Of a stretch of DNA of 64,000 nt, positions 913-31,847 are shown piece by piece (within the stretch, counting starts at the first letter, position 1; every line of letters begins with the position of its first letter). Below the pieces are notes generated by a model. That model searched no databases, was not told where the DNA came from, and was given only the letters and a program-made list of their open reading frames with translations. A program made the position numbers and the translations under genes. This stretch comes from Auanema rhodensis. Taxonomy: Eukaryota > Animalia > Nematoda. The stretch lies in NCBI GenBank assembly GCA_964057225.1, contig OZ059898.1:8556001-8620000 (forward strand), in the 5' to 3' direction.

Positions 913-2677
913 CTAATAATTATGTGAATAACCAGACTGTTGTGGATATCCTGACTGTGGGTATGGCTGCTGTGGATATGGCTGTTGGGGATATTGCTGT
1001 TGTGGTGGGTATCCCTGCTGTTGTGGTGGGTATCCCTGTTGCTGTGGTGGGTACCCCTGTGGGTAAGATTGTTGTGGATAACCGTTATGATCAGGATATT
1101 GCTGCATTGGATACTCTTGTGGATATTGACCTGAAGAAAAAGTATTTTACGTAGTACGGATCTTTTGTATTACCTTGGCCCTGATAACCTTCTTCATACT
1201 TGTTTTCTTCTCGAGGAAGAATACAATCAAAAACTGAACGGCACATACAATAAGCAACAGCGCAGCAGCAACAACAGCCAATCAGGATAAGGAGTAGAAT
1301 TCTGAAAATGAAAAGAATTACAAATACCTCAAGCTGTAAAATATCAAGCTGTATAAGCATATTAGTAGCATATTAGGGAAACAAGGACACAAATTATGTT
1401 TGAACGGAAAATAAAAAGTTGAGTAGCGCCGAGATGAAGAAACCGATCAAACTCATAGATCCGTGCTTCAACTTACATAAAATAGTGGTTAAGAAGAACA
1501 GTCTGAAGAACTTTTTCTTTGAATTGTAATCGACCATTATCGATGTCGACATTTTTGAAGAATATTTTCACATAAATGAACAAGTCACATACCAACAGTT
1601 GAACATATATAGTTGCACACGTATTAAAAAAAGGTTAGAGCTTACGCGAAGAGGATTCCAGTAAGTGAAAATTTAGAATTCGATGCTTGACTATCACCAC
1701 TTTTAACATTTTGTTGCACTTGAGCTGGACAACAGTCAGATCCACAACATACTTCAACGTCTTTTTTGCATCCCCAAATAATAGTTTTAGGTCTACTTCC
1801 ATCTTGGAATTGAATCTTGAAAAAAAATCTCTTTTTGAACATTTGAGAATTAACTTACGTTTCCGATAGCTTGAGCTGTGGAAGGAGTAGTCGAGGGAGC
1901 AACAGTAGTTGTGGTACTAGCGTCGTCTTGAGCTTGAGTTACTGGGGCAACAGTAGTTGTAGTTGTAGTGGTGGTGTTAGCTTCCAGAGCAGCAACCTGA
2001 ATATTTTCTACCATGTTTCAAAATTAGAGTTTTTGCTTTTTACTTGAGACTGGAGAGTGGATAATGGCATAGAACATTGGAACATATTAGGTTGATTTTG
2101 ATAGTGTCCATCCCAATAGTATGGTCGTCCATTAAGATGAACTGGATCAGAAGCAGACTTAATAATAGCTTTACCCGCTTCAAATACCAAGTGGCCTGGA
2201 GATAGAGATTAGTGATTTTGCCTATTAAAATGCATTTATACCAGCAATTGCACCAACAGCTCCACCAACTAAAGCTTTAGCGAAAGTGTTGCTAGATTTT
2301 GGAGCATGATTGAAGTTGCTGAAGAAAATACAATATAACTCTGATAAGAATATACACTCTCACTTTCCTCCGAAGTTTCTCGGTTGATTAAAGTTACTGT
2401 GTGGGGAAGGATGAAAACCGTTATTAGGCTGTGGATGGAATCCGCCATTCTGCTGAGGATGAAAACCAGAATTTTGTTGTGGGCGGAAACCTAGTAAGTA
2501 TTATATAACAATATAATTAACGTAAAAGTTGTATACTATACCTGGAGGAGGTGGAGGTGGAGCAGCTGGTGCACTGGGCTTTGAATTGCCTCGCGAAAAA
2601 AGACCAGAAAGCTTTTTGGCTTCCAATGGATTTGCTATTAACAATAATAATAGAATTGTAGATATGTGTTTGAACAT
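913..2677 (-). CDS. Nematode CX-module single-pass membrane protein with signal peptide, Thr-rich linker and YPQQ-rich tail (multi-exon)
   Basis: [20 protein letters not shown] signal peptide; ...[10 protein letters not shown]...FQCSMPL...[29 protein letters not shown] (CX Cys pattern); [10 protein letters not shown] followed by CCCCC; C-terminal (G)YPPQQ repeats; canonical GT-AG introns. Confidence 0.8.
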
Positions 2678-7842: not shown

Positions 7843-9646
7843 ATGTGCAAGTGGCTTAGCCAATTGCTTCCATCAGTTATTGCCTGGTCCCTAATAGTAG
7901 TTTGTACGACATGCTACTATTATTTTCTTGGTCCGGCATTATTTGATAAATGGGGATGGTAATTACTAAATTGGAAATTTTTCACTGTTTTTTAATTGTT
8001 AGGGTGGGATTCTCTTTAGTTGGAACAGATGTCGTAATTTTCTTATTAGTTATATCAAATCTTATTATGGCAATGTGTATGGACCCAGGAATTCATCCTA
8101 TGTGTGAGTTACTTCTCAGAATTTTCCATTTTTGCTAATTTAAATATTGCTTCAGCAACAAAACAAGAGGATTCATGTGCAGATGAATTTCGCTCACCTT
8201 TATATAAAAATGTTGAGATTAATGGAATAACTGTGCGAATGAAGTGGTGCATTCCTTGCAAGTTTTATCGACCACCTCGCTCTAGTCATTGTTCCGTATG
8301 CAATAGGTAACTTGAAAGTTTTAAAGTTCTAAAAAAATGTTATTTTTTTCTTAGATGTATTGAGACGTTTGATCATCATTGTCCTTGGGTACATAATTGT
8401 GTTGGAAGACGAAACTACAGGTTATTAGTATAATTAAATATATATTAAACTTATTCTTTAAGATATTTCTTCTTCTTTCTGGTATTTCTCAGTATTCATA
8501 TGATTTTGGTATTCGGTGTCTGTTTAGCCTATACTATCACTAACAAGTATGTTTTTTACCTTCTTTATTTTAATATTCTTTTACATTTAGCGGAGAAATG
8601 CTAGAAAGACCAAATTTGTGTTCTATTGTCCTATTAGCTTTATGTGCCATTTTATCTGTTCCTGTGATTGGTTTAACAATTTTCCACATAGTTTTAGTGT
8701 CCAGAGGACGCACAACTAATGAGCAGGTATTTTTTATTTTTCACTTTATTTATCTTTACAATGATGATTTAAGGTTACCGGTAAGTTTCAATCCGGTTAC
8801 AACCCGTTTACTATTGGCTGCACTAGAAATATTCAGCGCACGTTATTTGGAAGCCAACTTCCTTCGTAAGTTTTTAAAAATATTTGTAATTTATTTGATT
8901 CTAATTTTTTGTTTATTAGTTTTGTTTACATTTTCTTTTCTTATCCATAAGCATTGGTGATTGTAGATTTGAAAAATATGCAAAAGCTGCTAAAGCCAAA
9001 AGCGAAGGACAGCGGAAGCGTCAAGAGGAATCTGCTGCAAGACGGCACGATGTAGAAGAAGGTGATATTAACGAAACGACAGTTCTGTATGTTCCTGATA
9101 AAGATGGAAAGGAAGGCCATATCCGGGTAATTAGTTTTCAATATTGGAGTTTAGTGAAGAATTATTTTTTTGTAGCTGAAGCAATTGAAACTTGCTGACT
9201 CGCAGTCTGTTGGTACGGCTTTGTCAATCGCAAATGATGATGGCGTATCAGTGAAAGAAAGAAACGGTTCTAGCTGTAATCTCTTTGAATCTACTCAGGG
9301 TATGTATATTAAAATAATTTTTATTATTTTCTTGTTATATTTTGATTGTATTCTACGTGTTTAATTCAGCATCTCCCAGGATGTTAAGTCCTCAGTTAAG
9401 TCCCTCCGATGCTTATAAGGCTAGTGTCGAGGAAGCTACAAGGGGCTCATTGTCACCTGAAAAAGGTATTGCAAATGTTTCAATTTTTTTTAAATTTATG
9501 ATTCTTTGAGTTAACTGTATTAATCTTATTTAGAAAAAGTTGCCAATGCTGTCTTGAATGGCGACAGAAGTAAACCTATGGGATTCACTGATGCTATTCG
9601 GATACATGATCAATTAAATAGCCCCACTCGAGCTGTAGCCTTATAA
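7843..9646 (+). CDS. dhhc-8: DHHC palmitoyltransferase, ZDHHC5/8 type (multi-exon)
   Basis: [61 protein letters not shown] and GRTTNEQ motifs across spliced exons; ATG 7843 follows a TTTCAG acceptor; stop TAA 9644-9646. Confidence 0.93.
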
Positions 9647-12424
9647 GTCCCAGAACTATATTGTACTCTGTTTGAGTATGATCTCTCTAGAAACTGAAGA
9701 TAGATTATTTCTTGTTTTGATATGCCTAGGGCATAAAACTCGGGTAATGTATTTTAAACCTTTGCCTTATTTCAAATAAGCTTATTTATTACCACATACA
9801 TATTATTTCTAAAATCCTATGTAGAGTTTAGTTTGCTATTTCGTTACTCTGAGAAGATGTTTTACCAAAAATCTTATATAATTGGCTTGTTATTGTGACG
9901 CCAAAAGTCACAAGTGATTTTCACGATTTGTTTGGTAATCACCTATTTATTTCTATCCTGATTTAGTACCTATAGCTTAATGGAGCTTTGAAATATGCCG
10001 TATTAGCGCTTTGTGTCTGTTTTTCATTGTTGTCCTAGGAATATAGCTTTTGTTTTTTTTGTGGCGTACTTTGTTTCTGCTACCGGTATATACTGTGTTT
10101 ACTAGGGTGTAACTTTGTGCTAATACTCATTGCTTTTCTGCCTCCATTCGTTTAATATTGGATTAAAAAAAATTAAAATTTTGTATAGTGCTATTTGATT
10201 GTTGTTTTACCAGAAAGAACAGGTCAGTTCTCTGTCTCTGTGATCGTGACTCCCTGACTCTTCAGGAGATCTCTACCAAATCTTACTATAACAAGCCATT
10301 GCTTTGTATTTCTGTCTACTAATCTCTCTTGTTCCTATATTATCTTAACTTTTTTTTAATATAGCTTATGAAATATACAAAACGGAAGAAAAAAGAGAAC
10401 CTGGAAAAAATATATACATGGATCGGGTAATACTAATGTGTGAAATAGAGAAAGCTGCGAAAGCTCAAAAAAATAGAGAGAATGGGAGAGAAGAAAGAGA
10501 AAGTGAAAGAGAAGGTAACTTTTTAGATTTCTACTTTTTGCTACTTTTTTCACTAGACCCGCACGTCAACTAAAGATTCTACTTCACTTGAGAAGGAGTT
10601 AAAAGGAGGAAATCGCCACCATGCAAAGATGTTCATACATGTAGTCATGTAAGTTCTGGAAAACAATAACAGCAACAACACTACAAACCGACTTTTCCGT
10701 CAGTTGTAATTCGAATCGTTTGCCTCTCATTCCTCTCACATTCTACTGTTCTACTCAACACTGAATATTCCAGAAGGGATCTGCCGGCTGTTTTCAACTT
10801 GATATCCTCAACTGAATTCTGTTATTCATATTCATTTTCTTGGCAGTAGTATATAAAAGGTTGACGCGATTAATTATCATAATAAAGACTAGAAGTAGAT
10901 TTTATTTATTTATTGGTTTACTGTTATTTTCTTTAAAAATCAAGGAAATCAAGGAAAGGAAAAAAAATCGAAAAATTAACGCTACTAGCAACTTTCAATC
11001 TATCATATGAGGTCATTTTCGCCAGAAAGAACAGGTCAGTTCTTTCGAAGTCGAAAAGATTTCTGTTGTATTAGGTAGATAACTTGTATTCCACAATGAG
11101 ACGACCTCGTGATTTGTAAAAGCAATCACATTATGCATATAGGTGAGGCGGACAAAAACGTGTAAGAAAGAACAGAAAAAAAAATTTTATTGGATAGTCT
11201 TCTTGCTTTTAACTTTGAGCTTCGGCATTTATTTAACTATTTTGATCAGATACTTCACTGATCTTTTGTCTGCTCTTCAGCTTGCAATCAGCTGAGTCCA
11301 CTGAAATTAATGATGACGGGGGGAGATTTGTGACGGCAACACTAAGCTTGGAACGAAAATCTTTTAGTTCAGTTGACTTTATGAGGGACATCTCATTAAA
11401 TACCGTTAAGGAAGCTAGTTGATATCTTAAGAGTCTCGAATGACTAATTATCATCCTAACCCTTCAAACATATACGTTTCCATAATTCTTAAGAAGAAGA
11501 ATGATATAAAAGTGTTAGTGAGACTCTGGAAATATTTGCTCATTTTTTCTTTGTGAATTAAGATTTAAGTTTGTCAATAATGCTTCTCAGTTGATATATT
11601 TGTTTTTTTTATTATTATGTTGTTTAATTGACTTACTCATTAACTGTTTTCTTATCATAATAAAGACTAGAAGTAGATTTCATTTATTTATTGGTTTACT
11701 GTCATTTTCTTTAAAAATCGAGGAAATCGAAAAATTAACGCTACTAGCAACTTTCAATCTATCATATGAGGTCATTTTCGCTTTTACATCTAATCAATTT
11801 TCTTATGAACTTTTTTCTATAGAAAGTAAATCAAACATTCATTCTGTATTTTAAAGTGAAATGTATTAAGTTGTGTCCTCCTTATATTCATGTATATATG
11901 TACATAGCACTTACTATATATGTAATACGTATAATCAATAAAATTTCCATATAATATATTATTTTCGTAAGCTTTACTAATTTAAATTATCAAAGTTTTA
12001 TATTAATATTTCCTTATCGTTCTACGTGTATATCCGTACTTACCCGGAATATCTTAGGAAGAAATTAAAAATATATTGAAAATTCAGTTGTAAATTTGAA
12101 ATTTCTCACCCAGAATGCTTGATATCATTCATCCCCATATATTTCAAGGAATGTCAAATTTTCCCGCTACTCTATTTGATATTGATAATTGCTTGATATG
12201 TGTAATTAACAGACTTATAATATCCCTTCACACGAGTGTTCTAAAATTACTCTGCTTGATCTTTCCCTATCTCTTCTTCTCTTAGTTGTTTCTTGAAACT
12301 TTGATTTCATTTACTTCGTAGACAGTTCAGACATTACTCGTTTTTCATTTTGCTTTTTTTCTGAGCTATTTACCAGTGAACAATAGATTAGCCTTCTTGT
12401 TCTTAAATTTAAATAAAGGCCAAG

Positions 12425-13603
12425 AGTAGTCTATAAAAGGTTGACGCGAGATGGTCATTTTGCCCAAATGACGCTTTTTATACTTTTCGACCATTTTCAC
12501 GCTTTATTTTTCCGAAAATGTGTTTACATTCAACAAAAACACGTCATTTTTGAAAAAAGTCATTTTTTGACCATATGGTCATTTGCCCATTTTGCCCATT
12601 TCACAATTTTTGATCATTTCAAACAATTTTAAGGTAATAAATGAAATTTCATAGATCCAAAGAATCTGCGTCGCAAACTCCTTCAGGAGTGCCTGAGAAT
12701 CTAAGATTCGATAAAAACCTACCAAGTCTAACAAATGTTGATCTTGAAGAACTTGTGAAAGTACTTGAAATCAAGAATTTCTGAGGTACATTTATGCGAG
12801 ACACTTTGCCGAGTAAAGGAATTAAAGAAGGAGAAGTAGGTATTGTGATCAACAAACTCAACAAACTCCAAATTGTTTGACAACCTGTAAATGTGTAAAG
12901 AAACAATATTCAATTATACAGTATTTATCCAGATTCACATCGATAAAAATAAATTAAAAACAATAGACAAAATATCCGAAATAGATGACGAGGACTTCAG
13001 TCCGATTCCGTAGCTGATCCCTCGATCGATGACGCCTGCAAAATAACATCATCCAATGTACAGAGCGTGTTCTCTATCTCCGTGAGCACAGTCTCTTCTT
13101 CGGCATTCGCGGCAGCTCCTATAAAACAAAACAATTACATATGTGTAATCAAAATAGTTCTAGGAAAAGTTTTAAATTTATCAAATAGGAATTTTGTCTT
13201 TAAAATTGTTATAAAATGAAGCAAAACGTTTGGAGGTTTTGTATACCTGAACGATGTCGCAGACGACTATCAATATGCCCAATTTTCTCTAGAATACTTT
13301 GGCACAAGACTCTCCGCGTCGCTTCATCCATATCCCATGCACTATAAAAGACATGAATTAAATTATAACCCAAATTAAAAATAACAACTAAGATAATTAG
13401 AAATCATATTCTCACTCTTGACGGATCTTGTTGCGAACGTTGAGAAAAAGTGCGGAAAAGAAAAAGTGCTTTTTTCAAAAATGACGTGTTTTTGTTGAAT
13501 GTAAACACATTTTCGGAAAAATAAAGCGTGAAAATGGTCGAAAAGTATAAAAAGCGTCATTTGGGCAAAATGACCATCTCGCGTCAACCTTTTATAGACT
13601 ACT
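12425..13603. mobile_element. Internally deleted Maverick/Polinton relic (AGTAGT...ACTACT termini, 135 bp of paired TIR)
   Basis: Starts AGTAGTCTATAAAAGGTTGACGCG at 12425 and ends CGCGTCAACCTTTTATAGACTACT at 13603. 25-bp terminal stubs lie at 10845-10869 and 15159-15183. Direct 6-bp repeats are GCCAAG (12419-12424 / 15184-15189) and the mirrored CTTGGC (10839-10844 / 13604-13609). A protease-like fragment lies inside. Confidence 0.78.
12728..12853 (+). pseudogene. Fragment of a Maverick adenovirus-type cysteine protease (PRO) N-terminus
   Basis: LTNVDLEELVKVLEIKNF*GTFMRDTLPSKGIKEGEVGIVIN resembles the Polinton protease pattern L[ST]N.D....F[R]G.FMRD.LP....E.GI.N. It has an in-frame TGA at 12782-12784, and no catalytic His motif is visible downstream. 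Confidence 0.7.
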
Positions 13604-16600
13604 CTTGGCCTTTATTTAAATTTAAGAACAAGAAGGCTAATCTATTGTTCACTGGTAAATAGCTCAGAAAAAAAGCAAAATGAAAAACGAGTAATGTCTG
13701 AACTGTCTACGAAGTAAATGAAATCAAAGTTTCAAGAAACAACTAAGAGAAGAAGAGATAGGGAAAGATCAAGCAGAGTAATTTTAGAACACTCGTGTGA
13801 AGGGATATTATAAGTCTGTTAATTACACATATCAAGCAATTATCAATATCAAATAGAGTAGCGGGAAAATTTGACATTCCTTGAAATATATGGGGATGAA
13901 TGATATCAAGCATTCTGGGTGAGAAATTTCAAATTTACAACTGAATTTTCAATATATTTTTAATTTCTTCCTAAGATATTCCGGGTAAGTACGGATATAC
14001 ACGTAGAACGATAAGGAAATATTAATATAAAACTTTGATAATTTAAATTAGTAAAGCTTACGAAAATAATATATTATATGGAAATTTTATTGATTATACG
14101 TATTACATATATAGTAAGTGCTATGTACATATATACATGAATATAAGGAGGACACAACTTAATACATTTCACTTTAAAATACAGAATGAATGTTTGATTT
14201 ACTTTCTATAGAAAAAAGTTCATAAGAAAATTGATTAGATGTAAAAGCGAAAATGACCTCATATGATAGATTGAAAGTTGCTAGTAGCGTTAATTTTTCG
14301 ATTTCCTCGATTTTTAAAGAAAATGACAGTAAACCAATAAATAAATGAAATCTACTTCTAGTCTTTATTATGATAAGAAAACAGTTAATGAGTAAGTCAA
14401 TTAAACAACATAATAATAAAAAAAACAAATATATCAACTGAGAAGCATTATTGACAAACTTAAATCTTAATTCACAAAGAAAAAATGAGCAAATATTTCC
14501 AGAGTCTCACTAACACTTTTATATCATTCTTCTTCTTAAGAATTATGGAAACGTATATGTTTGAAGGGTTAGGATGATAATTAGTCATTCGAGACTCTTA
14601 AGATATCAACTAGCTTCCTTAACGGTATTTAATGAGATGTCCCTCATAAAGTCAACTGAACTAAAAGATTTTCGTTCCAAGCTTAGTGTTGCCGTCACAA
14701 ATCTCCCCCCGTCATCATTAATTTCAGTGGACTCAGCTGATTGCAAGCTGAAGAGCAGACAAAAGATCAGTGAAGTATCTGATCAAAATAGTTAAATAAA
14801 TGCCGAAGCTCAAAGTTAAAAGCAAGAAGACTATCCAATAAAATTTTTTTTTCTGTTCTTTCTTACACGTTTTTGTCCGCCTCACCTATATGCATAATGT
14901 GATTGCTTTTACAAATCACGAGGTCGTCTCATTGTGGAATACAAGTTATCTACCTAATACAACAGAAATCTTTTCGACTTCGAAAGAACTGACCTGTTCT
15001 TTCTGGCGAAAATGACCTCATATGATAGATTGAAAGTTGCTAGTAGCGTTAATTTTTCGATTTTTTTTCCTTTCCTTGATTTCCTTGATTTTTAAAGAAA
15101 ATAACAGTAAACCAATAAATAAATAAAATCTACTTCTAGTCTTTATTATGATAATTAATCGCGTCAACCTTTTATATACTACTGCCAAGAAAATGAATAT
15201 GAATAACAGAATTCAGTTGAGGATATCAAGTTGAAAACAGCCGGCAGATCCCTTCTGGAATATTCAGTGTTGAGTAGAACAGTAGAATGTGAGAGGAATG
15301 AGAGGCAAACGATTCGAATTACAACTGACGGAAAAGTCGGTTTGTAGTGTTGTTGCTGTTATTGTTTTCCAGAACTTACATGACTACATGTATGAACATC
15401 TTTGCATGGTGGCGATTTCCTCCTTTTAACTCCTTCTCAAGTGAAGTAGAATCTTTAGTTGACGTGCGGGTCTAGTGAAAAAAGTAGCAAAAAGTAGAAA
15501 TCTAAAAAGTTACCTTCTCTTTCACTTTCTCTTTCTTCTCTCCCATTCTCTCTATTTTTTTGAGCTTTCGCAGCTTTCTCTATTTCACACATTAGTATTA
15601 CCCGATCCATGTATATATTTTTTCCAGGTTCTCTTTTTTCTTCCGTTTTGTATATTTCATAAGCTATATTAAAAAAAAGTTAAGATAATATAGGAACAAG
15701 AGAGATTAGTAGACAGAAATACAAAGCAATGGCTTGTTATAGTAAGATTTGGTAGAGATCTCCTGAAGAGTCAGGGAGTCACGATCACAGAGAGAGGAGA
15801 GAAAAACAAAAAAAACGAGAGAAAACGATAGAAATGCAGAACGGAAACGAAGGAATTGAGTCGTAGAAAGAAAGAGAGAGATATAGGCACTTTAGCCCAA
15901 ACTTTGAGATGAAGCAGGAAAAGAAGGCAAATCGTGCCGAGTCTAGCCCGACCTTTATTTACTGCCCTCAGCCTTTCTTTTGTGAACATCATTCCGTAGT
16001 AATCATCAAGCTTTTTTCGTCTTCCATCCTGTTATGCCTGAGAGTCGACGTACACGTTGAAGCCAGATAGTTGAAGATTTTAATCTCCTGAAATCATGAA
16101 AGCGAAAACGGCACAATAGGCTCAGGCTCTGTTATAAGCAATTTCGTCTGCAGAAAATGACAGCCACGCAGACAGCATGGATATTTATGCTGATTTTGAG
16201 ATCTTATGACGATATATTGCTGGTTATAAATGAAATACATCAGTCTGAAATTTTTTCATCTTCTAGAACATTCTATCACATCTATCACCTCCGTTGTATG
16301 GTGTATGTCCTACTTATAAAGCAGTGACTTCTTTTTATTATTTTCCTTATCCTAAGAAATATTTTACTACTTTATATTATACTATTATTTCCTGTTTCTT
16401 TTTCTCTCATTTCCAATCCGTTTTTTTCGGTATTTTCAAGATCTATGCATGTTCTGAAGATGCTGCTGCCACGTGGACCTAAATTAGCTCCTATTCTGAA
16501 ACAATTCTATACACTGATTGGCTCCGTTCCTGTTGCACGAAACCGATTACCAGGCTCTGCCAAACCAGATCTTTCACCATCTTCTGCCGTCATCATGACT

Positions 16601-19600: not shown

Positions 19601-22600
19601 ATCATCTAATACATACTTCCGAAACTTCTGACCCACTCCTTGACTCTAATAACGAGAACATCCTGAACAACAATGATCTCGTGACGTGACGTTGACTGTT
19701 TTTTTCTGAAATTTTTGAAAGCAATGAGTATGTGTACAAGGCTGTGTATGAATCTGTCTCCCTGGAGGTTATCTGTTCTTTCTTATGAACTGAGGAACCA
19801 AATATCTTCTCTGGTCCACTTCCTCTCTCGTATATCGGTATCATCTGATCATCGTTTCAACCTAGACGGAAGTTTTGATTCCTAAAAAAGACCAAAAAAG
19901 AGTAGGCGCTGACAACGTAGAAATAGAGAGTGAGATTGTTAGATTCTTTCAGAGTTCGAGCTTCTGAGACTCGAGAGCGGAGGGCAACCGGATTACCGGA
20001 AATTGGCCGTCCATACCTCATTGAAAGGCAATAGGAGACTGTTCAAATACATAAATAACTCCCTAGTTTCTATAAGTGGTCCTTTTCATATGATGATAAC
20101 CTTTTCATAATCCAATTTTTAGTAATAATCATCCGTTACTGCTACTCTTGATATATCCACAATAACATATAGACTAGTTTTGAAGCAGCTTCTACTACAC
20201 GTAGTCAACGACGTTCTAGGCTCTTGTGTTGTAGACGACATACATCGTGTGTTCTAGGCTGGCTCAAGCAGAATGTCTTCCCTCTAATCACATCCCCCAT
20301 CCTCTCACATACACATACATACACACTTGCATATACACATACATATATCCCTCATTATTTCAGAAAAAAAAATCCTTACAGCTTTGCTTATCAACATTAC
20401 CACCCAATTTTCATTCAAACTTGAATTTTTTTCAGTGTTAATTATTATCTGAACGATGTTCTCCGCATAGTTTTCACATTTGTTTTTGTTAAGATGGTTT
20501 TCGTTTTGGCTCCCTTGGTTTCAGCAATGAATCATTTGTAGAAAAAATAACTTGAAGTTGTCATGTATCTGAAGTTGGAAAACTTGACATGTACTCAAGC
20601 CTTCAAGTCTTTTGGATATGTTCTGTCTTCAACATTTGCACCAAAATACAGAATCCTTTCTACAACAAACTTTTGGTAACAATTGCCGTCAGAAAATCGT
20701 ATGCAAAGGCATGTAGTTAACATCATCTTCTGTTTTTAGACAAAAGAATAATAAGAATTTAACTTATGCTTATATCTTCACAGGATATCTTATGAGATCT
20801 TATAAGAACCTTTACCTTATCAACTTTATGTTTTTTTATTCTCTCTCTCTCTTTCTCTCTTTCTCTCTCTCTCTCTTTGTCACTCTCTTTCTCTCTCTTA
20901 GTCCAACTAGTCAGTAGATTCTATCATTTCTTTGAGTTTTTCTGTATTCATTTCAACATCAAAGCCGTTGTTTGTCCCCACGTAATGCTTCCTTGACCCT
21001 GAAGCAAACACTAGACAAGCCTATGATGGCAAGCAGATCGGCTTTACACAACCGAAAAGAAACCAGTAAGATAGATGGAGTGCTGGGTATGTCCATATTG
21101 GTCTCAGATGCATGAGAGGAAAGTCCTTCTGTTGCTTTACGTTCTGCCTTCTCTCTCATCTCTTCACGTCATCGGATGTACAATGGAAGGTGAATTAGAA
21201 GACGAAGGGTATACTCATGATTAGGCGATGAGAATACTGCAAAATAATTCTTGCGTTAGAAAAAAAGAAAAAGAAAAGGAAACAGGTAAGTAGTTTTTTC
21301 TTATATACATATCTAACTAATCTTGCAAATATTAATGTATGTAAGTTCAACTCATTAATGATTCTATAGAAAATTTATAGAGAAAACTAACTATGCTCAT
21401 CCATTACATTCACATAATGATTGAAGCTCATTCACTCTTCAAATTGCTTAAAACCTCCTTTCTCTTTTCCCCTCTCTTTTAGTATTAGTCATGTTTCTGC
21501 TAAGGTCAACTTTAAGCATTGACATTAAACACAACTATTCTAGCAAGGAAATTAGTCTGTGAAACTCTAGAAGAATGAACATGAATCAGAATAATTCTTA
21601 CTGGATTGACTTCACATTGCAACGTATTTCAAATGATTCTCATTCAGAATTCAGCTAGTTTTATCTATTTCTGTTATTGGGCTCTACCAAAAAACTCGTT
21701 TATCCACATCAACATGTTTCCTCAAGTTTTGAACTTCGAATTGTTTATTTTTGAAAAACAAACATACAAATACATATTCTTTCTAATATTCCACGCAATA
21801 GTATAATAGATTAAGATCATATATATAAATATATATTACTATATATATGAATATAACACAAACTTACTTTTATATTGTAGCATTGAGATTTTAATTTGAA
21901 TCAGCTGTTACAACATAAAACATCATTAAAACTTGGATTCTAACGTTTAACTTTCAAATTTTTAATTGGTTTTTTTCGAAATTCACATAATATACTATGC
22001 AAATTCATGAAAATATCAATAATCGAGCTAATTAGTGTTTTGGATCTATTTCATCTTATTTTTTGAAGTATTCTTATAATATTTCTTAGTAATCTTTGGT
22101 ATTTATTCCGTTTTTTTACACGAAAACTAGGCTTTTTTCTCACCAAATTACGTAGATGTCTGTCATTGCGGCTATACGTTTTGTATATTCTATATATAAC
22201 AAAGTTATTCATGAATTTTATAAATTATATAATTATATTTATATTTATAAAATATAAATATATTTAATTATTATAAAACTATTTTTATCTTTACTTTAAT
22301 ACTATAAATCATATGATTTTATTCGAAATCTGAAATTTCTTTTTTAAGAACTAAGTTTACTCATAAGTTGAATATATTTCAATTTGCTTTAAATTTATTC
22401 ATATTTTATGTTTTTCTATTGAGATGAACTGTTATAGAGCATGTTCAAACATCATTAAAGAGTAATAGAGAGAAACAGAGAGAGAGAGAGAGAGAGAGAG
22501 GGGGAAAGTGAGAACAATAAAGAGAAAGAGGAAATAACTATATATAGCAAGGTAAAAATGAAGATGGAAAAGCTATTATTGACACTAAATTTTATTTTTT

Positions 22601-25600
22601 TTCGTGTAAATTTGTTCTGAATGAATTTGTGGACAAAAAATAATTGAAACGAGTACAAATAAGCAGTTTACAATCATATTATATTCAAGAAAATCTTTTA
22701 TTTTCTTTTTTTAATTTTAAATTCTCATTATTTTTGTACTTTTTTTACATGAATTTATTATTTATTCAGCTGAACATATAAGTTTAACTCATTCAAGTCT
22801 GTTGATTATAAACAAAGTAAAGCAAAATTCTGCAAAAAAAAAAATAAAAAGATATTTAATGCTCTGAAGCTGTTTAGCTTCTCTGCATTTCATAGCAAAA
22901 CATCTAACTTTAAACTTGAAAAATTTCCGGTCATTTTCCGTTTCGCATAATTACGGAACAATTGAATTTTATATTTTTATAATAACTTTATTATTTTTTT
23001 TGTTAAAATTGAAATAATTATGTTGTTTATTTCTCAATTACATGTACATATCTAGTAGTATGCGTGATTGACAAACCCAGTTCATGACAAGTTTCGAAAC
23101 AAACTTGACTAATCAGCTTCATCTAACTCATAGCAATCATTGTATCTTTTTTTTTTCGAAGCAAGAAAATCTTATTTTTTGAAAAATAATATTTTACCTT
23201 TTTCAATATTTTTTTTTCAAAAAAATAAAACAAAAGTTTGATAATGTGTTCAATCTCTCTTATCCATAAAATATCTTATTATTATTATATTTCCTGATAT
23301 TAAATAAAAAATATTTAATATATTATATATCCTAAACTATTTTCTTCCCATTTTCTCTATTTCTTTTTAATATATTATCTGATATTCATTGAAATGAAAT
23401 GAAATTCTTTCACAGTATTTAATCATCTTTGATTCATTTTAATGACTTTTTCAATCAAAAAAGTGTCATTAACTATACTATTTTCATAGTTTTGTACTTA
23501 TTCTTTATGAAATTCATCATCATCATCACCTTAATTTCCAAAATTATTCTTTTTTTTTGTATTTTGCATCTGAAAATAGCTAGCATTAGCTTCAATACAA
23601 CAAATTTTTTTCTTTCGTGTGAGACTCTACAGCTGAAATAATTTGGCGGAAAAATAGCTAATATGTATATAACAACTGCCTAATAGTGTATGAATTTTTT
23701 GTTCATATTATTTTATATTTAATTTTTCTCTTATTCTTCAAATATTTAAATTTAATCTTTTTTATTTAAAATTATAGTTTGTTTACTAAGTTATATATAT
23801 AGTCTTAACTGATATGTTTCGAATAGAATGTTCAAATTCCGAAAAATACGAATAAGATTACATCATTGACGTGATTTACTTATCTAAACATAGTTGAAAT
23901 CAGAAATAATCTAAAAACTAGTAAGACACAATGTTTCATTTTCAATTGTTACGCAAATCTTCGACCTTTCTTTATTCTCTTTTCAAATTTTAGATTCCAA
24001 AATCTCTTTGATGAACTTTAACTTGGAATTAAAATACTAATGAAATACGAGAAGATTGGATTTTAACTAATTTTATTTTATTTCATTTCAATTCTTTATT
24101 TGATCCACAACTCTAAATTTTTTCATTTCCACACAATGGAAGCACCTGAATTTTGATCTTCTACCTGTTGATTACGTTAACATCATGGACATCTGACGTG
24201 ATGTTTTATTTGATCCAAACCTTGGAACCATGTTTGCGAGAAATACGAGTGCTTGATGCTTTTATGCCTTTAAGAAGATTTTTGATCATAAATTCCTCTC
24301 AAACTTGTTAATACTTTTCTTTTTTTTAAATTTATCTTGCTTAAGTAAACGATTACCGTTATGAACATTATTTATCTGCTCATATGGCCTATGCCAAAGG
24401 TATAGAGGCTTTTGGCTTTCTCTCTCTCTCTTGAAATTTTGAGCTGTTGACGAATCGGTTTGCTTCTCAAAATTTGGTCTCAAGTGGTTTCTGCCTTCTT
24501 TACTATCTTTTTTTCTCCTTCTCTCTCCTACTTTGTTCCCTCTTTTTCCTTTTCTTTCTTATTTTCTCTCAATATCTTCGTTAAGGATACAGAAAAAAAC
24601 GTCATAAGCTGCCAATTTTTCTTTCTTTCTCAATAAAACGTAAACTTTCTAATATCAACTAATCGTTCATTCAATCCACCCTCCTATCAAATTACTCCAT
24701 TTTACACTTTAAAAATTTCCAAAAAAAAAGTTTCAATTGTTTACTTTCCATCGGGGGGGGGGTACCTCAGAGTATAAACTATCGAATTTAAATAGAAAAG
24801 TCTATCAAAATCTTTTTTTTTTACTAAAAGTTATATCTTTTTCTGATTTTTCTCTTACTTTTGTCTTGTAATAGCTTCAATGATCCAGATGAGCAAGAAT
24901 ATTTGTTTGTTTTTTTTTTTGAAAAAGAAAACATAAAACATTTTCAAAGAAACAGTATGAAAGTACTCCATATTTTAACAAAGATTTTTATCAGAAATTA
25001 ATATAAATATATAATATATTTTATTTTTAAAATAGATATGTTATCATTAATTTTATGTTGTTATGTCTATCATCATGTAAATATATATGCTATACACCAT
25101 TAATGATGATTATTCTTAACTAAAAGCCTAACTTTATCAAAAACATTTACATATAGTTTCTTTAAAAGTTTATATATATATATGTATTTATTTATTATAT
25201 TTAATAATATAATTAATATAATTAGTTAATGATGTTATTTTCTCATAAAATTGATAAAATACAAAATAAACAAATATCTTAATTTTTAAATGTTTTTCTT
25301 TGCTCATAAAATGAAATAAAATGATATTACATTTCGAATTTATGAGAAGAGCCTGGCACAAGTTGGTCAATCTGTAGAGTACTAAATGATGAAACCATGA
25401 GAAATATAAAGAGAGAATGTGTGAGAGACTTAGATATAAAGGAAAGAAAAGAAAACGATGAAAGACAAAAAGATTGAATAGAATATGTTGAAACACTGAG
25501 AGACAGACTGAGTCAGACTCATCTATGAAGCAATAAAAACTACATCTATCTGCCTCAGAATTGCTCTACGAGTACCTTTGGTTTCTTCATCCCACCTGTT

Positions 25601-27740
25601 TGCACCTGCTTCACTTACATCTTTTTCTATTTTCTCTGATAATTTTTTTCTTTGTCAGCCTTATTACCTTAACAGCCACCGCCCAATAACCATATGCATT
25701 TTTCATTTTCAAGTTTGCTTTTATTGTTAAAAACTTCAAATTATTATGTAAAATATATTTTTAATTGGTATTTCATGAAAATGAATGACAAAATATGTAT
25801 TGAGATAAGGTGAAAGTAAGTGTTAGAAACTGAGAAAAGATTCCTTCATTTTGTGTTCTCAAGGAAGAACTGAGATAGGCTGTCGACAATCAGATTTTTT
25901 TTGTTTTAATCAGTTTGATGTACTTTTATTCATATTCTGACTGTAAAATCAGTTGTGGATAAAGCAGAAAGATCAAAGTATCAGGGAATAGTTGATTGGA
26001 TGAAGTCATAATCAGAGGAAAACCTCAGTTCGATCGTGGCTGCTGTATTTTCACCGTACGACAGGCTTGATAAGAAAATCATAAAACTAGTTCTCAACCC
26101 GCAATCAACTATAATCACAGATCTTTTGAGCAGTTTAGATATTTTAATATTATAATTTCATTATAAATATTCTATTTTTTTGTTATAAATAGAGAAATTC
26201 ATTTAATGTTTCTTGTTAAATTATTAAATTTTTTATTTTTAAAATAGTCTCATCTCACTAACTCATTAGCATATTTAGAAAACAAACAAATTTGGCTTAT
26301 CATGCTCATTTGTTGTTTTTTTTAATGTGCCAGAACGGTTGCTTAGCCCCTCTTCATATATTTTTTTCTTTTCTTTTTCTTTATTTTCTCTATGTATATA
26401 CTCTCATTTCAATTTTTTTTCTGATAATCTCTCTCTCTCTGTCTCTCTTTCTTGTTACATATATATCTTTGTATTTGTCTTCATTTCTTTTCATTACTTA
26501 TCTCTTTTTTGTTTTTTGATTTCTTTTTAGAAAGCTCAAAAATTACTTTATTGCTGTTCTTAGCAGCTATCATGAGCTCAAAATAAGGACAAAAAAACAC
26601 GAAATCAAGTAGCCTTATGCACTTGTTTGTGGAAATTTTCAAATTCATTGCTCCATCACCGATTTCATAAAAAAATGAAGAAAACGAAATATCGTGTAGG
26701 AAAGTAAAGAAGAAAAATAAAAAAGTAAAAGAAAGCAACAATAGGGAATTAGAGAGAGAGAGGGAGAGAGAGAGAGAAAGAGAAAGAAGAAAACAGAACT
26801 AATCGTAAGAAACATTATATTCCATGTGCTTTTTGCGTCTTCAATCTTATATGAAATCCAGATGTCTTTACTGTTCATCGGAATAGTTTAGCAGTTCCGT
26901 TGGTATTCAATGAGGAAGTTCATATAATTTTCAATTTTCAATTTATTTCTTTATTTATATTTTAAATTAATATAATAAAGGAATATATAAATAATAAAAA
27001 TTATAACTTTGAGTACGTGTATGTTTCAAATAAAAGTATTTTCTCTTCACTACACATTTTAATTTATGGTTTTCTGCAACATATATATGCTGTATATGCT
27101 TGAATTCATTGTACTCATATACATACATATATGAATCTATAACTAACTATAACTAATATTTCTATAAATATATATTTAATCAATTCAATTATTATAATTT
27201 TTTTCCACAGATTATGAAACAATGTTTTTATATTTTTGTTGTCTTATTGTCAAGATTTCATATTTAAAAGTTGAATCAGGCTAGCTCCAACGTCCATTTT
27301 TGAATTTTTGGTCCAGGTGTCACCATTTGATTCATCCTTCAGACAGTTCTTCATACAAAAATCATTGTTCACCAATTAATTTTCTGATATTCCGAAAAGC
27401 TACAATTCAATAACGAGCATATTATATTATTATTTTTATTCTATTTTATAAAATTATTTTCTTTCGATTAACATTCATTGTTTTCACATTTTATGCTCTT
27501 TTGATAACATTTCTCTTTCTATTTCTCTCTCTCTATATATATTTTTCTCTTTATAAGTATGCTCCCTTAGGAAATTTAATCCACACTTATTTTGGCAATT
27601 TTTCATATATATATATATATAAATATACATCTACACAAAGATGGTAAGTATCAGGCATATGTATATACGTCAAAAACTTTTCAACTGACATGGTCAACAA
27701 GAAGACAAACAAAAATCTGATATCTTTTTTGCCTCCAACA

Positions 27741-27785
<45 letters not shown>

Positions 27786-28214
27786 ATATACATCATTATT
27801 CAGTTGATTATTTCACGTAAAAGCTTTCTCTACTACTATGTCCTTTCGTTTTCACATTCTCTGCATTTGGATGGGTCACACGAATCACCGATCATCTGAT
27901 TCCTATTGTCCTGGAAGTCACGATTTCTGCGTTCATGTTCTCATCATTTTCCATGTTCGTCGTAGAAAAGGGGACACTTGGATAAGCAAAGTAATTGAAT
28001 TCTAACTTATATCTCAATCAATTATTCTTAATATATCCAATATTCTTTTAAAATTTTTAAATACTATATAATCTACTCTGATAATTTAATTTTAAACTAC
28101 ATTCTGCTTCATTGATGATTTATTTGGTTTTCTTTTATAATTTTGTATGTTCTTGTCTTTAATTATAATCAAACAATCATTTATAAAGATTTCTAACTTA
28201 TTTTCATTCAGACC

Positions 28215-29782
28215 ATGTCAAATACGTCGTCGCATTGTCTGACGGATCGTCAGATGATGCTGGCCGTCAATGGTCCAGAACGCATATTCATAGGAACAAT
28301 AGTTCCAATTCTCATTATATTTGGAATCAGTGGTAATATATTGAATCTTACAGTACTTGTAGCTCCAAATATGCGTACAAGGTATATCAATAAAACGTTT
28401 TAATCGAATTATAATCTTTATAATATATTTCAGATCAAACCTTTTACTTGCCTCATTAGCTGTTGCTGATATTGTTTTTCTAATATTCATGCTACCTCAC
28501 TCATTAGCTCATTACAAACTTTTTGCCCTTAGGTAAAACTTGAAAAACGTGAAAAAAAAACTTTTGTTTAACTATAATTTACTTTTAGTTATTGGTTTCG
28601 ACGAATATATCTGGAATATAAGATGCATTTACTAGCAGTTCTTAATTGGGCATCAGCTGTCGCTATTTGGTCAGTTATATTATAGAAACAAAACATTGTT
28701 TATCTTTTAATTGCATTTTTTTATATGATTATAATCAATTTTCATAATATATTTGTATAATTGATTAAGTATTACAGGTTGATTCTAGTGATATGTTTAG
28801 AAAGATTAATGGGCATCAAGTACCCATTATCTGTTCGAAAACATAAAAAGGTATACGACATATACTTTCCTTATTTCATTTATATTTTTAATTAAAATAT
28901 TTTTAAAAATATAAATCTTATTTTAAATTTATTTATCAGATTTTAACACCTCCTGTCATTGTATCAACTATTGTTATAACAACTGGAATATTAACATCAT
29001 ATAATCATTTCACATATTATTGTGCAACACGTCATTTCTGTGATGGAACTCAGTTTCATGCTATGTGTATTAAGACAGACTCAGAAAAGTATGTTTTATT
29101 CTATATTTATATATAAATATATTTTATTTCAGATGGTTTCGTAACCAAACTAATCCAAATTCTGCATTAGTTCGAGGTATAGCTCATTGGGGTCCACACG
29201 TTAATGCAATTCTTGGCGTCTTTGTTCCAATTGTACTTGTTCTTATATCAAATGCTATGCTTATATATACATTACGACAAAGGTATGATCAAACTTCAAA
29301 TAATCAAAATATTAATTTTGTTTTGAAGGCAAAAGCTATTTCTAATGCAACAACCATCTATTAAATCTGAATCACATCTGAATGGTGGACAATCACGAAC
29401 AGAACATAAGGTTAAGGAACTATTTAAGGATCTATATATTAATTATATTAATTATAGATAACTATAACAGTTACAGCTATTGTAACATGTTTTATTATAA
29501 CACAAGGACCATCAGCATTAATTACGGTTATGGCTCAATATTATACAAATACAAGTCAATGGATGATTGCAATGGTATATTATATTTATTATAATTATAA
29601 TTATTTTATTTTAATTAAAGACTTCACTAATTACAACAACTGTTGTACTTGGTAAAGCATTAAATTTTGTGCTTTTCTGTTTATCATCTGCTACATTTCG
29701 TGCTCGTCTCATGAAACAAACGAAGAAAAGCTTATTACGAAGAACGACAAGGTATGCCACCGTTGCTGCAAATGCAGACTAA
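28215..29782 (+). CDS. Class A peptide-type GPCR (FMRFamide/sex-peptide receptor-like; resembles C. elegans AH9.1 from memory), short isoform
   Basis: TM1 GISGNILNLTVL, TM2 LASLAVADIVFL, TM3 ICLERLMGIKYPL, TM5 FVPIVLVLISN, TM6 AIVTCFIITQGP, TM7 KALNFVLFCLSSATFR; multi-exon; stop TAA 29780-29782. Confidence 0.9.
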
Positions 29783-30448
29783 GATGACGTCAACGTCTTG
29801 ATCGCATCGCATGCCTTTCCCAAACTATAGTTTTTACTCCTATAATCTATTTTTTCAATTTCAATTAGTTGATATGATGTTTTCCAATACTTGCAGATGG
29901 TTATGTCACTTCTCTCTCTCTCTCTCTCTCACTCTCTCTCTCTCTCTCGCTCTCTTTCTCCTTTTTCTATAGTACCTTTTTTCCTTTTATACATCTACGT
30001 GTTTGGATGTTTTTATTTCAAATCACTTAGCTTTTTATTTTATTTTTCTTGCATTAGAAACATAGATTAATTTAGTTTTACTTAGTACTGTAATCATCAA
30101 AGAAAATACTGGGTCCCTCATACGTTATATGTATGTTTGTATGTCAACATTTGATTATTTGTTTCAATGTTTCCTCAAATCATTCCTTTTTCTGTTTATA
30201 TTCACCACAAAATTATTTTATTCAATTGAATTCAAAACTTACCTCTGTTTTGGCTCAGATGTGATGATGTGCCATGTTATATGTGTCTTCAGTTGTTTGA
30301 GTGTGTATCGTGTTATGTGTGCATATATATGATGATCGGCTTCAAAAATCATATTTTAACCTCTTATTTCATTCTTTATAACCACCTTCTTCTGATTCTA
30401 TTTCACTTTTATTAATAAGAATTAGATGTTTATAACAATCCTAATTCT

Positions 30449-30455
<7 letters not shown>

Positions 30456-30506
<51 letters not shown>
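30456..30506. repeat. (CT)n microsatellite; similar CT/AG tracts near 20840-20900, 22478-22500, 26751-26776, 27740-27781, 29910-29960
   Basis: Dinucleotide runs are directly visible. Confidence 0.95.
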
Positions 30507-30512
<6 letters not shown>

Positions 30513-30760
30513 GCCCCATTCCTCTAGCTTGCTATCGCTTTCTTCTCACCCCTCCAGATTTATAAGTAATAACTTAGCTTCTCCTAACAACGGCTTCTCT
30601 TTGATTTGCCTTGCATATAGTTTGCTGATTTAGTAGTTTCTGGCTGACAGCTTTCAGCTTTTAACGCCCTATTTAACCCTATCCCCTTGTAGTGTAATGC
30701 TCCTTAACCTCACAAGATTGTTGATATTTGGTCAGCATCAGCTTTTTTTAGCTCGTTTAG

Positions 30761-30989
30761 ACATTCGTCTGTACCAACTGCAACTACAACAATCGTCGAG
30801 CTACCACTGGCTGGCGCTTGCGCTCGTGTCGACCGTATTCGTCGGCACCGTAGCCTTAGCCGTGAGACTACTTCAGCGTCCGAGCGTCTGATCAAGAAGC
30901 GCGACTTCTTCATGGGATGGTCACAGGGTACACAAGCTGAAGATGGCATAGCCTTAGAACCTGTACGTCGTGGTACAAGCGTCGTTTGA
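30761..30989 (+). CDS. Alternative terminal exon of the GPCR (long C-tail ending GTSVV)
   Basis: Donor AAG|GTATG at 29751/29752 joins acceptor TTTAG|A at 30760/30761 in frame: R-HSSVPTATTTIVELPLAG...EPVRRGTSVV*. The exon is a GC-richer island in AT-rich DNA. Confidence 0.72.
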
Positions 30990-31847
30990 AATCAAACGAT
31001 AGGCATTCTACCAAAGAACCCTGAATCGTAATCATAAAACAGAAATCTTCTTGTCAATCTCCCATTCATCTCTTTGCAAAAATGGTTTTAAAACTCAATT
31101 CTTAATGAAATTGTGTTGAACTTTGTCCTGTTTGCCTAACCTATGGATGCTTTTATGTGAAGTTTTATATTTACGATTTGCATTGCGTCTAACAAGTCGT
31201 TTGTTAAGAAATACGTTTTTTTGCCATCCAAATGAGTCTAACCGATATCCAGAACGGGCTCGCATACTATTCTCTTCAATATCTAATCTTCCTGTTTTTC
31301 TCTCTCTGTCTCTCTGTTACTCTCTCTTTCTCTGTAAATTTTATTTAATTATCTAATAGTTTCACTAAATTATTCACTCAGACTCACAAGAATCACTATC
31401 CCTGTAATTATCACTCACACACGAGAATCACAATAATTTTGGTTTTTTTAAGTTTTGAACAATATTTCTTTTATATCATTTTCATATATATTTCAATATA
31501 TAAGCCATAACCCTATATTATTCCAAGATCTTGCTGACTTCTTGAAATCTTAAAGTTTTTTAAAATATGAATATCATAAACATTCCAATTTCCACCCAAT
31601 CATGTAGCTTGTCAGCATCTTTGTCCTGATCTCTAATTTTTGAAATTTCTCCTATTGTTTGCATGAAAAATCATTCATAATTCGGGTTCCTTATATGATT
31701 CATTTGTGAGATTAAAGTATCTTTTCTGTTTGTTTTTGTACATTTTGTATTATGTTTGTATTTTTAAAAAAAAATGTTTTTTCTTTTACTTCAACATAAA
31801 GAAAAAATAAATTTTTCTTTTATAACTTTTTTCTATTTTTTATAATA

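What the first reader, a model, noticed from the sequence alone, without database searches (positions are those of the whole stretch)
10235..15793. 5.6-kb palindrome centred on a Maverick/Polinton relic
Seen: two 2,325-bp arms with no difference I could detect, around a 909-bp spacer. The innermost 135 bp of each arm begin with AGTAGT, and the spacer holds a protease fragment. The inverted symmetry therefore extends ~2.2 kb beyond the element's TIRs into host-like DNA. Known: Mavericks have AGT-repeat termini, long TIRs, 6-bp TSDs and an adenovirus-type protease, and nematode Mavericks carry cargo genes. Inference: fold-back or template switching at the TIRs copied flanking DNA in inverted orientation, possibly a snapshot of how Mavericks capture host sequence.
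Basis: partly seen in the sequence, partly recalled or inferred. Interest (0 to 1): 0.85.

Follow-up and report, generated by a model that had tools for sequence, protein, structure and literature searches.

The report
Perfect palindrome built on Maverick remnant
A 5.6-kb perfect inverted duplication surrounds the gene-less remnant of a virus-like Maverick/Polinton transposon, and its internal landmarks show it formed by DNA copying that folded back on itself, a known kind of rearrangement seen here at a new kind of site.

Summary
The arms are 10235-12559 and 13469-15793 (2,325 bp, no mismatch) around a 909-bp single-copy spacer. The Maverick label is supported. Each arm's inner 135 bp starts with (AGT)2. 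A plus-strand reading in the spacer is the N-terminal part of an adenain-type protease. No other Maverick gene is in the window.

- A second 25-bp copy of the same terminus lies 1.58 kb further out in each arm.
- GCCAAG forms an exact 6-bp direct repeat that pairs the inner terminus of the left arm (12425) with the outer terminus of the right arm (15183). Chance is about 1e-3.
- A 22-bp sequence just outside the left arm recurs inside both arms.

So the arms are not simply host DNA beyond the TIRs. They combine both original flanks of one insertion plus a Maverick end.

My best reading is an in-situ fold-back or template-switch inverted duplication with at least three switches. This is a known mechanism at a new kind of site. 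An assembly artefact cannot be excluded without reads. Cargo capture is not shown. The source organism was not identified. Fetching related Mavericks was barred and left out.

The parts
10235..12559 (.). Left arm of the palindrome (2,325 bp). It consists of segment W (10235-11021), segment H (11022-12424) and T (12425-12559).
   Evidence: an exact reverse complement of 13469-15793.
13469..15793 (.). Right arm of the palindrome. It consists of T' (13469-13603), H' (13604-15006) and W' (15007-15793).
12560..13468 (.). Single-copy 909-bp spacer, the fold-back loop. The left part is Maverick-derived; the right part is unidentified.
   Evidence: One search shows no residual inverted similarity between its two edges. 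One search shows that a single strand of 12425-13603 folds into a 135-bp stem with this loop.
12425..12559 (+). T: a Maverick-type left terminus starting with (AGT)2. It carries a GGTCATTT-type subterminal motif array that continues about 25 bp into the spacer. Its mirror T' is 13469-13603.
   Evidence: The end motif matches the published Maverick hallmark (PMC8097293).
10845..10869 (+). T25b: a second, solo 25-bp copy of the same terminus (24/25 identical to the start of T), in the same orientation. Its mirror is 15159-15183 on the minus strand.
12419..12424 (+). GCCAAG, the left copy of the candidate 6-bp target-site duplication. The right copy is 15184-15189, immediately after the outer terminus of the right arm. 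The mirrored CTTGGC copies are at 10839-10844 and 13604-13609.
   Evidence: exactly 6 bp. The chance of this relation for a random pair of hexamers of this window is about 7e-4.
10874..11022 (+). R1, a 149-bp repeat abutting the solo terminus and ending in the GGTCATTT motif. Its mirror is 15006-15154.
11652..11781 (+). R2, a second copy of R (127/130 identical to R1, with one 19-bp indel). Its mirror is 14247-14376.
10210..10231 (+). X, a 22-bp sequence lying 3 bp outside the left arm. It is repeated exactly at 11022-11043 inside the arm and inverted at 14985-15006.
   Evidence: no other X-like site in the window at up to 3 mismatches.
12641..12877 (+). Remnant of an adenain-type (Peptidase_C5) protease gene, N-terminal part only. 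It is broken by 1 in-frame stop and 1 truncation, with no frameshift seen. It lacks the conserved His-Trp and Cys-Gly motif regions of its relatives.
13000..13373 (-). Unidentified minus-strand ORF pieces in the right half of the spacer, possibly two exons. Their origin, element or other, is unknown.
   Evidence: There is no Pfam hit and no homologue of 30-94 aa. A blank there says nothing about longer kin.
8400..9646 (+). Neighbouring host gene: the 3' exons of a DHHC palmitoyltransferase. Its coding end lies about 590 bp left of the palindrome.

Best explanation
This is a real, recent, in-situ inverted duplication made by repair or replication synthesis that switched templates at the remnant of one Maverick/Polinton insertion.

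Inferred history. One element integrated at GCCAAG. Its left end was at 12425 and its right end at 15183. The left host flank ran from the DHHC 3' region through the single 22-bp sequence X straight into 11044-12424. The right host flank was 15190-15793, continuous with what now follows the right arm.

The element lost its interior. DNA synthesis then folded back at the loop (12560-13468) and copied T plus the left flank in inverted orientation, giving 13469-15006. The right end of the element plus the right flank (15007-15793) was likewise copied in inverted orientation to the left of X, giving 10235-11021 and duplicating X.

This takes either two successive break, fold-back and extension events, or one multi-switch replicative event in which the nascent strand copies itself and re-anneals to the native right flank.

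Shown: the perfect palindrome, the four termini, the 6-bp direct repeat, the X duplication and the protease remnant. Inferred: the order of events, which arm segment is the original, and whether the 135-bp inner repeat pre-existed as a true TIR (TIR-primed fold-back) or was created by the fold-back.
For: - Arms and spacer are exact.
- (AGT)2 termini and 6-bp TSDs are published Maverick hallmarks (PMC8097293; PMC10748475).
- GCCAAG flanks the 12425 terminus on the left and the 15183 terminus on the right. The chance is about 7e-4 per comparison. The inner pair and the outer pair of termini have reverse-complement flanks, not direct ones.
- X (22/22) lies 3 bp outside the left arm and exactly at the R1 junction inside both arms. 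This is what a switch that returns 22 bp upstream, or a break just right of X, would produce.
- Junctions carry 0-3 bp of filler or microhomology.
- AT skew is of like sign across the inferred original joins: left flank -0.25 to H -0.11, and W' -0.04 to right flank -0.03. This is weak support.
- The subterminal motif array continues past 12559 on the left side only.
- Fold-back inverted duplications with single-copy spacers of 766 bp and more, some bounded by inverted transposon copies, are documented (PMC3907307; PMC10622511; PMC10164571).
- The protease remnant lies 81 bp inside T.
Against: - No reads, no second assembly and no other strain could be examined, so the structure rests on one assembly.
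- The TSD-paired ends share only 25 bp, which is short for Maverick TIRs (46-1,447 bp in vertebrates).
- The inner junction at 13468/13469 has no microhomology. That is unusual for a microhomology-primed fold-back.
- The origin of R1 and R2 is unexplained.
- The direction of copying is argued from parsimony and a weak compositional trend only.
- Three or four switches is a complex history for a single locus.
Confidence: 0.55

Rival explanations
1. A small Maverick relic (12425-13603) with genuine 135-bp TIRs sat in the left-arm sequence as it stands. A break to its right let the right TIR pair with the left TIR. Synthesis then copied 2.19 kb of the left flank, and the end joined to the present right flank at 15793/15794.
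For: - The 135-bp inverted repeat is perfect and ends abruptly, as a natural TIR boundary would.
- A single strand folds into that stem.
- No microhomology is then needed at 13468/13469.
- GA/CT-rich microhomology is possible at the right outer boundary.
- TE-primed fold-backs are known (PMC3907307).
Against: - It leaves the 6-bp relation between the flanks of the inner and outer termini to chance (about 1e-3).
- It needs a pre-existing 22-bp direct repeat that happens to lie 3 bp from where copying stopped.
- The relic would have no TSD of its own.
- The outer terminus next to GCCAAG and the right flank is unexplained.
Confidence: 0.15
2. Assembly artefact. Palindromic chimeric long reads (fold-back reads, or whole-genome-amplification chimeras), or a wrong walk through an inverted repeat, duplicated one real arm in silico.
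For: - 100% arm identity is what an artefact gives.
- Fold-back read artefacts and amplification palindromes are documented (PMC12870357 and PMC6218980, listed).
- The organism is poorly represented in public data, so the assembly may be a single draft.
Against: - Read artefacts fold at a molecule end without a 909-bp asymmetric loop.
- After the second arm they would continue as the reverse complement of the first flank, not into 48 kb of unique sequence.
- The TSD pairing across the two arms and the X duplication give a coherent biological history, which an artefact has no reason to mimic.
- At least one arm's composite order, including the R1/X junction, must be real in any case.
Confidence: 0.15
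3. The whole unit, or 10845-15183, is a copy of a mobile long-TIR (foldback-type or non-autonomous Maverick) element family. It arrived here already palindromic.
For: - The outer termini at 10845 and 15183 are in correct inverted orientation and begin with (AGT)2. This gives a formal element of 4,339 bp with 1,715-bp perfect TIRs.
- The arms carry internal direct repeats (R1/R2), as foldback elements do.
Against: - No direct repeat flanks either 10235-15793 or 10845-15183. The flanks are reverse complements because they lie inside the palindrome.
- The 6-mer next to the inner terminus is mirrored inside the unit, which means copying happened after integration.
- There is no second copy in the window.
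- The X duplication ties the unit to this locus.
Confidence: 0.05
4. Two or more independent Maverick insertions in opposite orientation at this locus, followed by ectopic recombination or gene conversion between them. This is the process proposed for Polinton-driven inversions at C. elegans eri-6/7.
For: - There are four termini of two sequence types and a diverged extra repeat (R2), which suggests more than one insertion over time.
- Polinton copies are reported to drive inversions and reshuffling (PMC11414722).
Against: - Recombination between inverted copies inverts DNA but does not duplicate 2.2 kb of unique flank on both sides.
- Perfect identity over unique, non-element DNA needs copying, not exchange.
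Confidence: 0.1

Closest known systems
Fold-back (foldback-priming) inverted duplications with a single-copy spacer (human constitutional inv-dups, PMC3907307; yeast, PMC10622511 and PMC10164571)
   Same: Two inverted copies flank a non-duplicated spacer of about a kilobase. Human spacers range from 766 bp to 70 kb. In some cases inverted transposon copies sit at the spacer edge. The distal junctions show little or no homology and small insertions.
   Different: The known cases are mostly terminal. They pass through a dicentric chromosome and span kilobases to megabases. This one is interstitial and only 2.3 kb per arm. It is rejoined on both sides and needs at least one further switch, because both original flanks are duplicated.
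Polinton/Maverick remnants that reshuffle a host locus (C. elegans eri-6/7, PMC11414722)
   Same: Gene-poor Polinton remnants and their terminal repeats sit at the breakpoints of a structural rearrangement next to a host gene. Terminal sequences persist after the interior is lost.
   Different: At eri-6/7 the outcome is inversion, with TIR copies left as direct repeats (744-bp TIR). Here it is a perfect inverted duplication of flanking DNA. The terminal sequence here was not compared with the C. elegans one, because fetching was barred.
Intact Mavericks/Polintons (PMC8097293; PMC10748475)
   Same: The (AGT)2/(ACT)2 end motif, a 6-bp TSD, and an adenain-type protease gene reading inward from an end.
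   Different: No pPolB, integrase, ATPase or capsid gene is present. The element-derived DNA totals about 1.2 kb, against 13-25 kb for intact elements. The TSD-paired ends share only 25 bp.
Foldback-type transposons with long, internally repetitive TIRs (from my own knowledge, not tested against a named member)
   Same: Long inverted arms with internal direct repeats around a short unique middle.
   Different: There is no TSD at the outer ends and no other copy in the window. The arms consist mostly of unique sequence.
Palindromic artefacts of long reads and of whole-genome amplification (PMC12870357; PMC6218980)
   Same: Perfect inverted duplication.
   Different: Such artefacts usually lack a long asymmetric loop and do not rejoin unique sequence on the far side.

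Membership tests
Maverick/Polinton element | Conserved 6-bp end motif 5'-(AGT)2 ... (ACT)2-3' | tested here: met
   AGTAGT occurs at 12425 and 10845, with mirrors ending at 13603 and 15183. The motif is as published.
Maverick/Polinton element | 6-bp target-site duplication | tested here: met
   GCCAAG occurs at 12419-12424 and 15184-15189 and is exactly 6 bp. Chance is about 7e-4. It pairs the inner left terminus with the outer right terminus, not the 135-bp pair.
Maverick/Polinton element | Terminal inverted repeats of about 50-1,500 bp | tested here: inconclusive
   A perfect 135-bp inverted repeat exists but is part of the palindrome. The TSD-paired ends share only 24/25 bp.
Maverick/Polinton element | Adenovirus-type (Peptidase_C5) maturation protease | tested here: met
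   Only a fragment is present. The window pieces align colinearly to residues 14-52 of P0019. P0019 scores 26.5 bits on PF00770, against a cutoff of 21.3. A family profile has adenovirus proteinase 1avp_A as its best PDB hit, E=8e-4. The window pieces alone give no Pfam or PDB hit. The catalytic motif regions are absent.
Maverick/Polinton element | Protein-primed DNA polymerase B and retroviral-type integrase | tested here: not met
   No such domain appears in any window ORF of 90 aa or more, or in the ORFs of the arms and spacer. It is therefore a remnant, not an element.
Fold-back inverted duplication | Inverted copies separated by a single-copy spacer | tested here: met
   2,325-bp arms and a 909-bp spacer with no internal symmetry.
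Fold-back inverted duplication | Inverted homology or microhomology at the spacer/duplication boundary | tested here: inconclusive
   If the right-hand 135-bp copy pre-existed, this is met with 135 bp. If it did not, the junction at 13468/13469 has none.
Fold-back inverted duplication | A novel distal junction with short microhomology or an inserted filler | tested here: met
   There is a 3-nt filler between X and the left arm (10232-10234), 1 bp is shared at 11021/11022, and the 22-bp X is duplicated.
Fold-back inverted duplication | Doubled copy number of the arms in the genome, with reads spanning the junctions | not testable with these tools
   No reads or other assemblies are available. 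Look-ups of host ORFs at both outer junctions found nothing on record.
Mobile long-TIR / foldback transposon | Direct target-site duplication at the outer ends, and multiple copies | tested here: not met
   The flanks of 10235-15793 and of 10845-15183 are not direct repeats. There is no other copy in the window. A genome-wide census was not possible.

The most novel reading that the evidence does not exclude
The unit 10845-15183 is a newly made non-autonomous Maverick derivative. Fold-back synthesis at an integrated remnant gave it 1,715-bp perfect TIRs that begin with the family's own (AGT)2 termini and now enclose about 2.8 kb of formerly flanking DNA. This would be a natural intermediate showing how these virus-like elements lengthen their TIRs and take up host sequence.
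Probability: 0.1. Interest if true: 0.75.

Novelty: new member of a known kind. Interest (0 to 1): 0.45.

Why it matters
It gives a base-pair-resolved example of a virus-like transposon remnant seeding a structural rearrangement next to a host gene. The internal landmarks (TSD, solo terminus, 22-bp duplication) let the history be read from one sequence.

It is also a caution for annotation. A 'perfect 135-bp TIR' can be a by-product of a palindrome, and only the TSD shows which ends belong together.

If the same genome or its relatives held moved copies of the composite, the locus would bear on how Mavericks acquire long TIRs and cargo. In the library I searched, no paper that mentions Polintons or Mavericks deals with fold-back duplication or palindromes.

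Tried and rejected
- Pfam and PDB searches of the window's own spacer ORF pieces gave nothing. A profile of short relatives against PDB also gave nothing. The link to adenain came only after reaching 126-154-aa relatives.
- The arm ORFs have no Pfam family.
- I tested whether arm segments of similar length (10235-10838 and 11044-11651) are diverged copies. They are not, and no arm or spacer segment resembles another or the rest of the window.
- I tested whether the 135-bp repeat decays gradually into the spacer. It does not.
- The right half of the spacer has no homologue among proteins of 30-94 aa. This blank says nothing about longer proteins.
- The organism was not identified. There is no tRNA or Rfam hit. 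The Tc3-like ORF has a best relative at only 50% identity and unnamed. Exact look-ups of three host-side ORFs, two of them spanning the outer junctions, were blank. For those look-ups I kept the flanks to 1-1.5 kb so that the central relic itself would not be fetched. With 1,000 bp, would still have taken in the outer 25-bp terminus and R1 had they found anything.
- Kapitonov and Jurka 2006 is not held.
- I rejected a TSD at the outer ends of the palindrome and a TSD for the 135-bp pair, from the readings.
Full report
OBSERVATION. The inverted repeat is real and exactly as described. The perfect arms are 10235-12559 and 13469-15793 (2,325 bp, no mismatch). The spacer is 12560-13468 (909 bp). 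The repeat finder's longer arms (10232-12567) add 4 mismatches at the edges. Nothing else in the 64-kb window resembles the arms or the spacer.

IS THE CENTRE A MAVERICK REMNANT? Three lines of evidence say yes.
- The inner 135 bp of each arm (T, 12425-12559; mirror 13469-13603) begin with (AGT)2. This is the end motif published for Mavericks, together with perfect 6-bp TSDs (PMC8097293; TSD and TIR ranges also in PMC10748475).
- 81 bp inside T a plus-strand reading starts (part 12641-12877). Its two pieces gave no Pfam or PDB hit alone.
- An exhaustive search with the first piece found short relatives at 74% identity. These read continuously where the window copy is interrupted. One of them led to 126-154-aa relatives.
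- Among those relatives, P0019 passes Pfam's cutoff for Peptidase_C5, the adenovirus endoprotease family (26.5 against 21.3 bits). Three others score just below it.
- The window pieces align side by side to P0019 residues 14-31 and 33-52.
- A profile of the family has adenovirus proteinase 1avp_A as its best PDB hit, E=8e-4.
- The window copy is a remnant. It has one in-frame stop, one truncation and no frameshift seen. It ends before the His-Trp and Cys-Gly motif regions that the relatives share.
- No polymerase, integrase, ATPase or capsid domain was found in any window ORF of 90 aa or more, or in the arm and spacer ORFs.

(a) The 25-bp start of T recurs once more in each arm, 1.58 kb further out and in the same orientation (T25b, 10845-10869; mirror 15159-15183; 24/25 identical). 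The core, taken from the window by coordinates, occurs only at these four places.
(b) The six bases left of T are GCCAAG (12419-12424). The six bases left of T25b are CTTGGC, its reverse complement. On the top strand GCCAAG therefore precedes the terminus at 12425 and follows the terminus at 15183. This is an exact 6-bp direct repeat around 12425-15183, and by symmetry CTTGGC surrounds 10845-13603. Random hexamer pairs of this window show that relation at about 7e-4. Neither the inner pair of termini nor the outer pair has direct flanks.
(c) A 22-bp sequence X (10210-10231) lies 3 bp outside the left arm. It is repeated exactly at 11022-11043, where repeat R1 ends, and inverted at 14985-15006. 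There is no other X-like site.
(d) R1 (10874-11022) follows T25b. A second copy, R2 (11652-11781), is 127/130 identical with a 19-bp indel. Both end in the GGTCATTT motif that also recurs in T and, on the left side only, about 25 bp into the spacer.

READING OF THE ANATOMY. Name the segments as follows:
- W = 10235-11021: the inverted right flank, then CTTGGC, T25b and R1.
- H = 11022-12424: X, unique DNA containing R2, then GCCAAG.
- T = 12425-12559 and S = the spacer.
The present order is: left flank, X, 3 nt, W, H, T, S, T', H', W', right flank.

The TSD says that one integration had its ends at 12425 and 15183. The host DNA was then left flank - X - (11044-12424) on one side and (15190-15793) - right flank on the other. 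Under that reading X was single-copy. Both H' (inside the element's remains) and W (left of H) are inverted copies made after integration.

The novel joins are X/filler/W (10231-10235), R1/X (11021/11022, with its mirror copied from it) and possibly S/T' (13468/13469). They show 0-3 nt of filler or microhomology.

Two routes give this product.
- Two successive breaks, each followed by intrastrand fold-back, extension and end joining. A break just right of X in an already existing shorter palindrome would duplicate X and extend the left arm by W.
- One replicative event in which the nascent strand switches to the inverted right flank, returns 22 bp upstream of where it left, folds back onto itself after S, and finally re-anneals to the native W'.
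AT skew is of like sign across the inferred original joins, which is weak support. I did not build any pre-rearrangement sequence. The argument uses coordinates only.

OPEN POINT. The TSD-paired ends share only 25 bp. One possibility is that this family has very short TIRs with unlike subterminal regions. The 135-bp 'TIR' would then be created by the fold-back. The one-sided motif array fits this, but the blunt join at 13468/13469 does not. The other possibility is that a genuine 135-bp right TIR existed, the initiating break fell inside it, and R1 is a junction insert. The window alone cannot decide.

COMPARISON WITH WHAT IS KNOWN.
- Fold-back inverted duplications with a single-copy spacer (766 bp to 70 kb) are established. 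In 3 of 21 sequenced cases inverted LINE/SINE copies lie at the spacer edge (PMC3907307).
- Breaks near natural inverted repeats drive them in yeast (PMC10622511). [quoted passage not shown]
- Polinton remnants and their TIRs are reported to reshuffle the C. elegans eri-6/7 locus (PMC11414722).
- Among papers in the held library that mention Polintons or Mavericks, none deals with fold-back duplication or palindromes.
I therefore file this as a new member of a known kind of rearrangement, at a Maverick remnant. It is a remnant, not a member of the element family in the functional sense, because polymerase and integrase were tested and not met. A resemblance to panhandle or terminal-repeat repair in protein-primed linear genomes comes from my own memory only and was not tested.

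RIVALS. An assembly artefact cannot be excluded without reads. Fold-back read artefacts exist (PMC12870357 and PMC6218980). However, the long asymmetric loop, the return to 48 kb of unique sequence, and the coherent TSD and X logic argue against it. A mobile long-TIR element fails the TSD test at its outer ends. Recombination between inverted insertions would invert DNA, not duplicate it.

CONTEXT.
- The source organism was not identified.
- GC is about 33%, and the DHHC gene has GT-AG introns of about 45-75 bp. Mariner- and Tc3-type ORFs point to a small invertebrate or similar eukaryote. This is inference only.
- The window is not human-like.

SLIPS, DECLARED.
- That should not have been written.

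Noticed in passing
window 8400-9646 (+): 3' exons of a DHHC palmitoyltransferase gene with short GT-AG introns (about 45-75 bp). Its coding end lies about 590 bp left of the palindrome, so the left arm may lie in or just beyond its 3' UTR.
   Followed up: partly
window 36132-36716 (+) and 36027-36545 (-): A mariner-type ORF (HTH_48, E=1.6e-13) overlapped by a 173-aa antisense ORF with no family.
   Followed up: no
window 41067-41651 (+): A Tc1/Tc3-type transposase ORF (HTH_Tnp_Tc3_2). The best public relative is only 50% identical and unnamed, so the source organism is poorly sampled.
   Followed up: partly
window 60814-62619 (+): Exons of a diflavin reductase (Flavodoxin_1, FAD_binding_1 and a weak NAD_binding_1 match).
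   Followed up: no
window 20824-31350: Many (CT)n/(GA)n tracts of 50-80 bp on both strands. The outer ends of the palindrome also fall in short CT/GA-rich runs.
   Followed up: no
window 13000-13373 (-): Two ORF pieces in the right half of the spacer, separated by a GT..AG-bounded gap, that could be a small two-exon gene. No family, structure or homologue was found.
   Followed up: partly
window 12454-12590 and 11011, 11770: The motif GGTCATTT, with its GTCATTT core, is concentrated in T, the left edge of the spacer and the ends of R1 and R2. Seven of the window's 9 GGTCATTT sites lie in the palindrome. It looks like a subterminal binding-site array.
   Followed up: partly
window 937-1059: Two adjacent tandem repeats (periods 30 and 21).
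   Followed up: no
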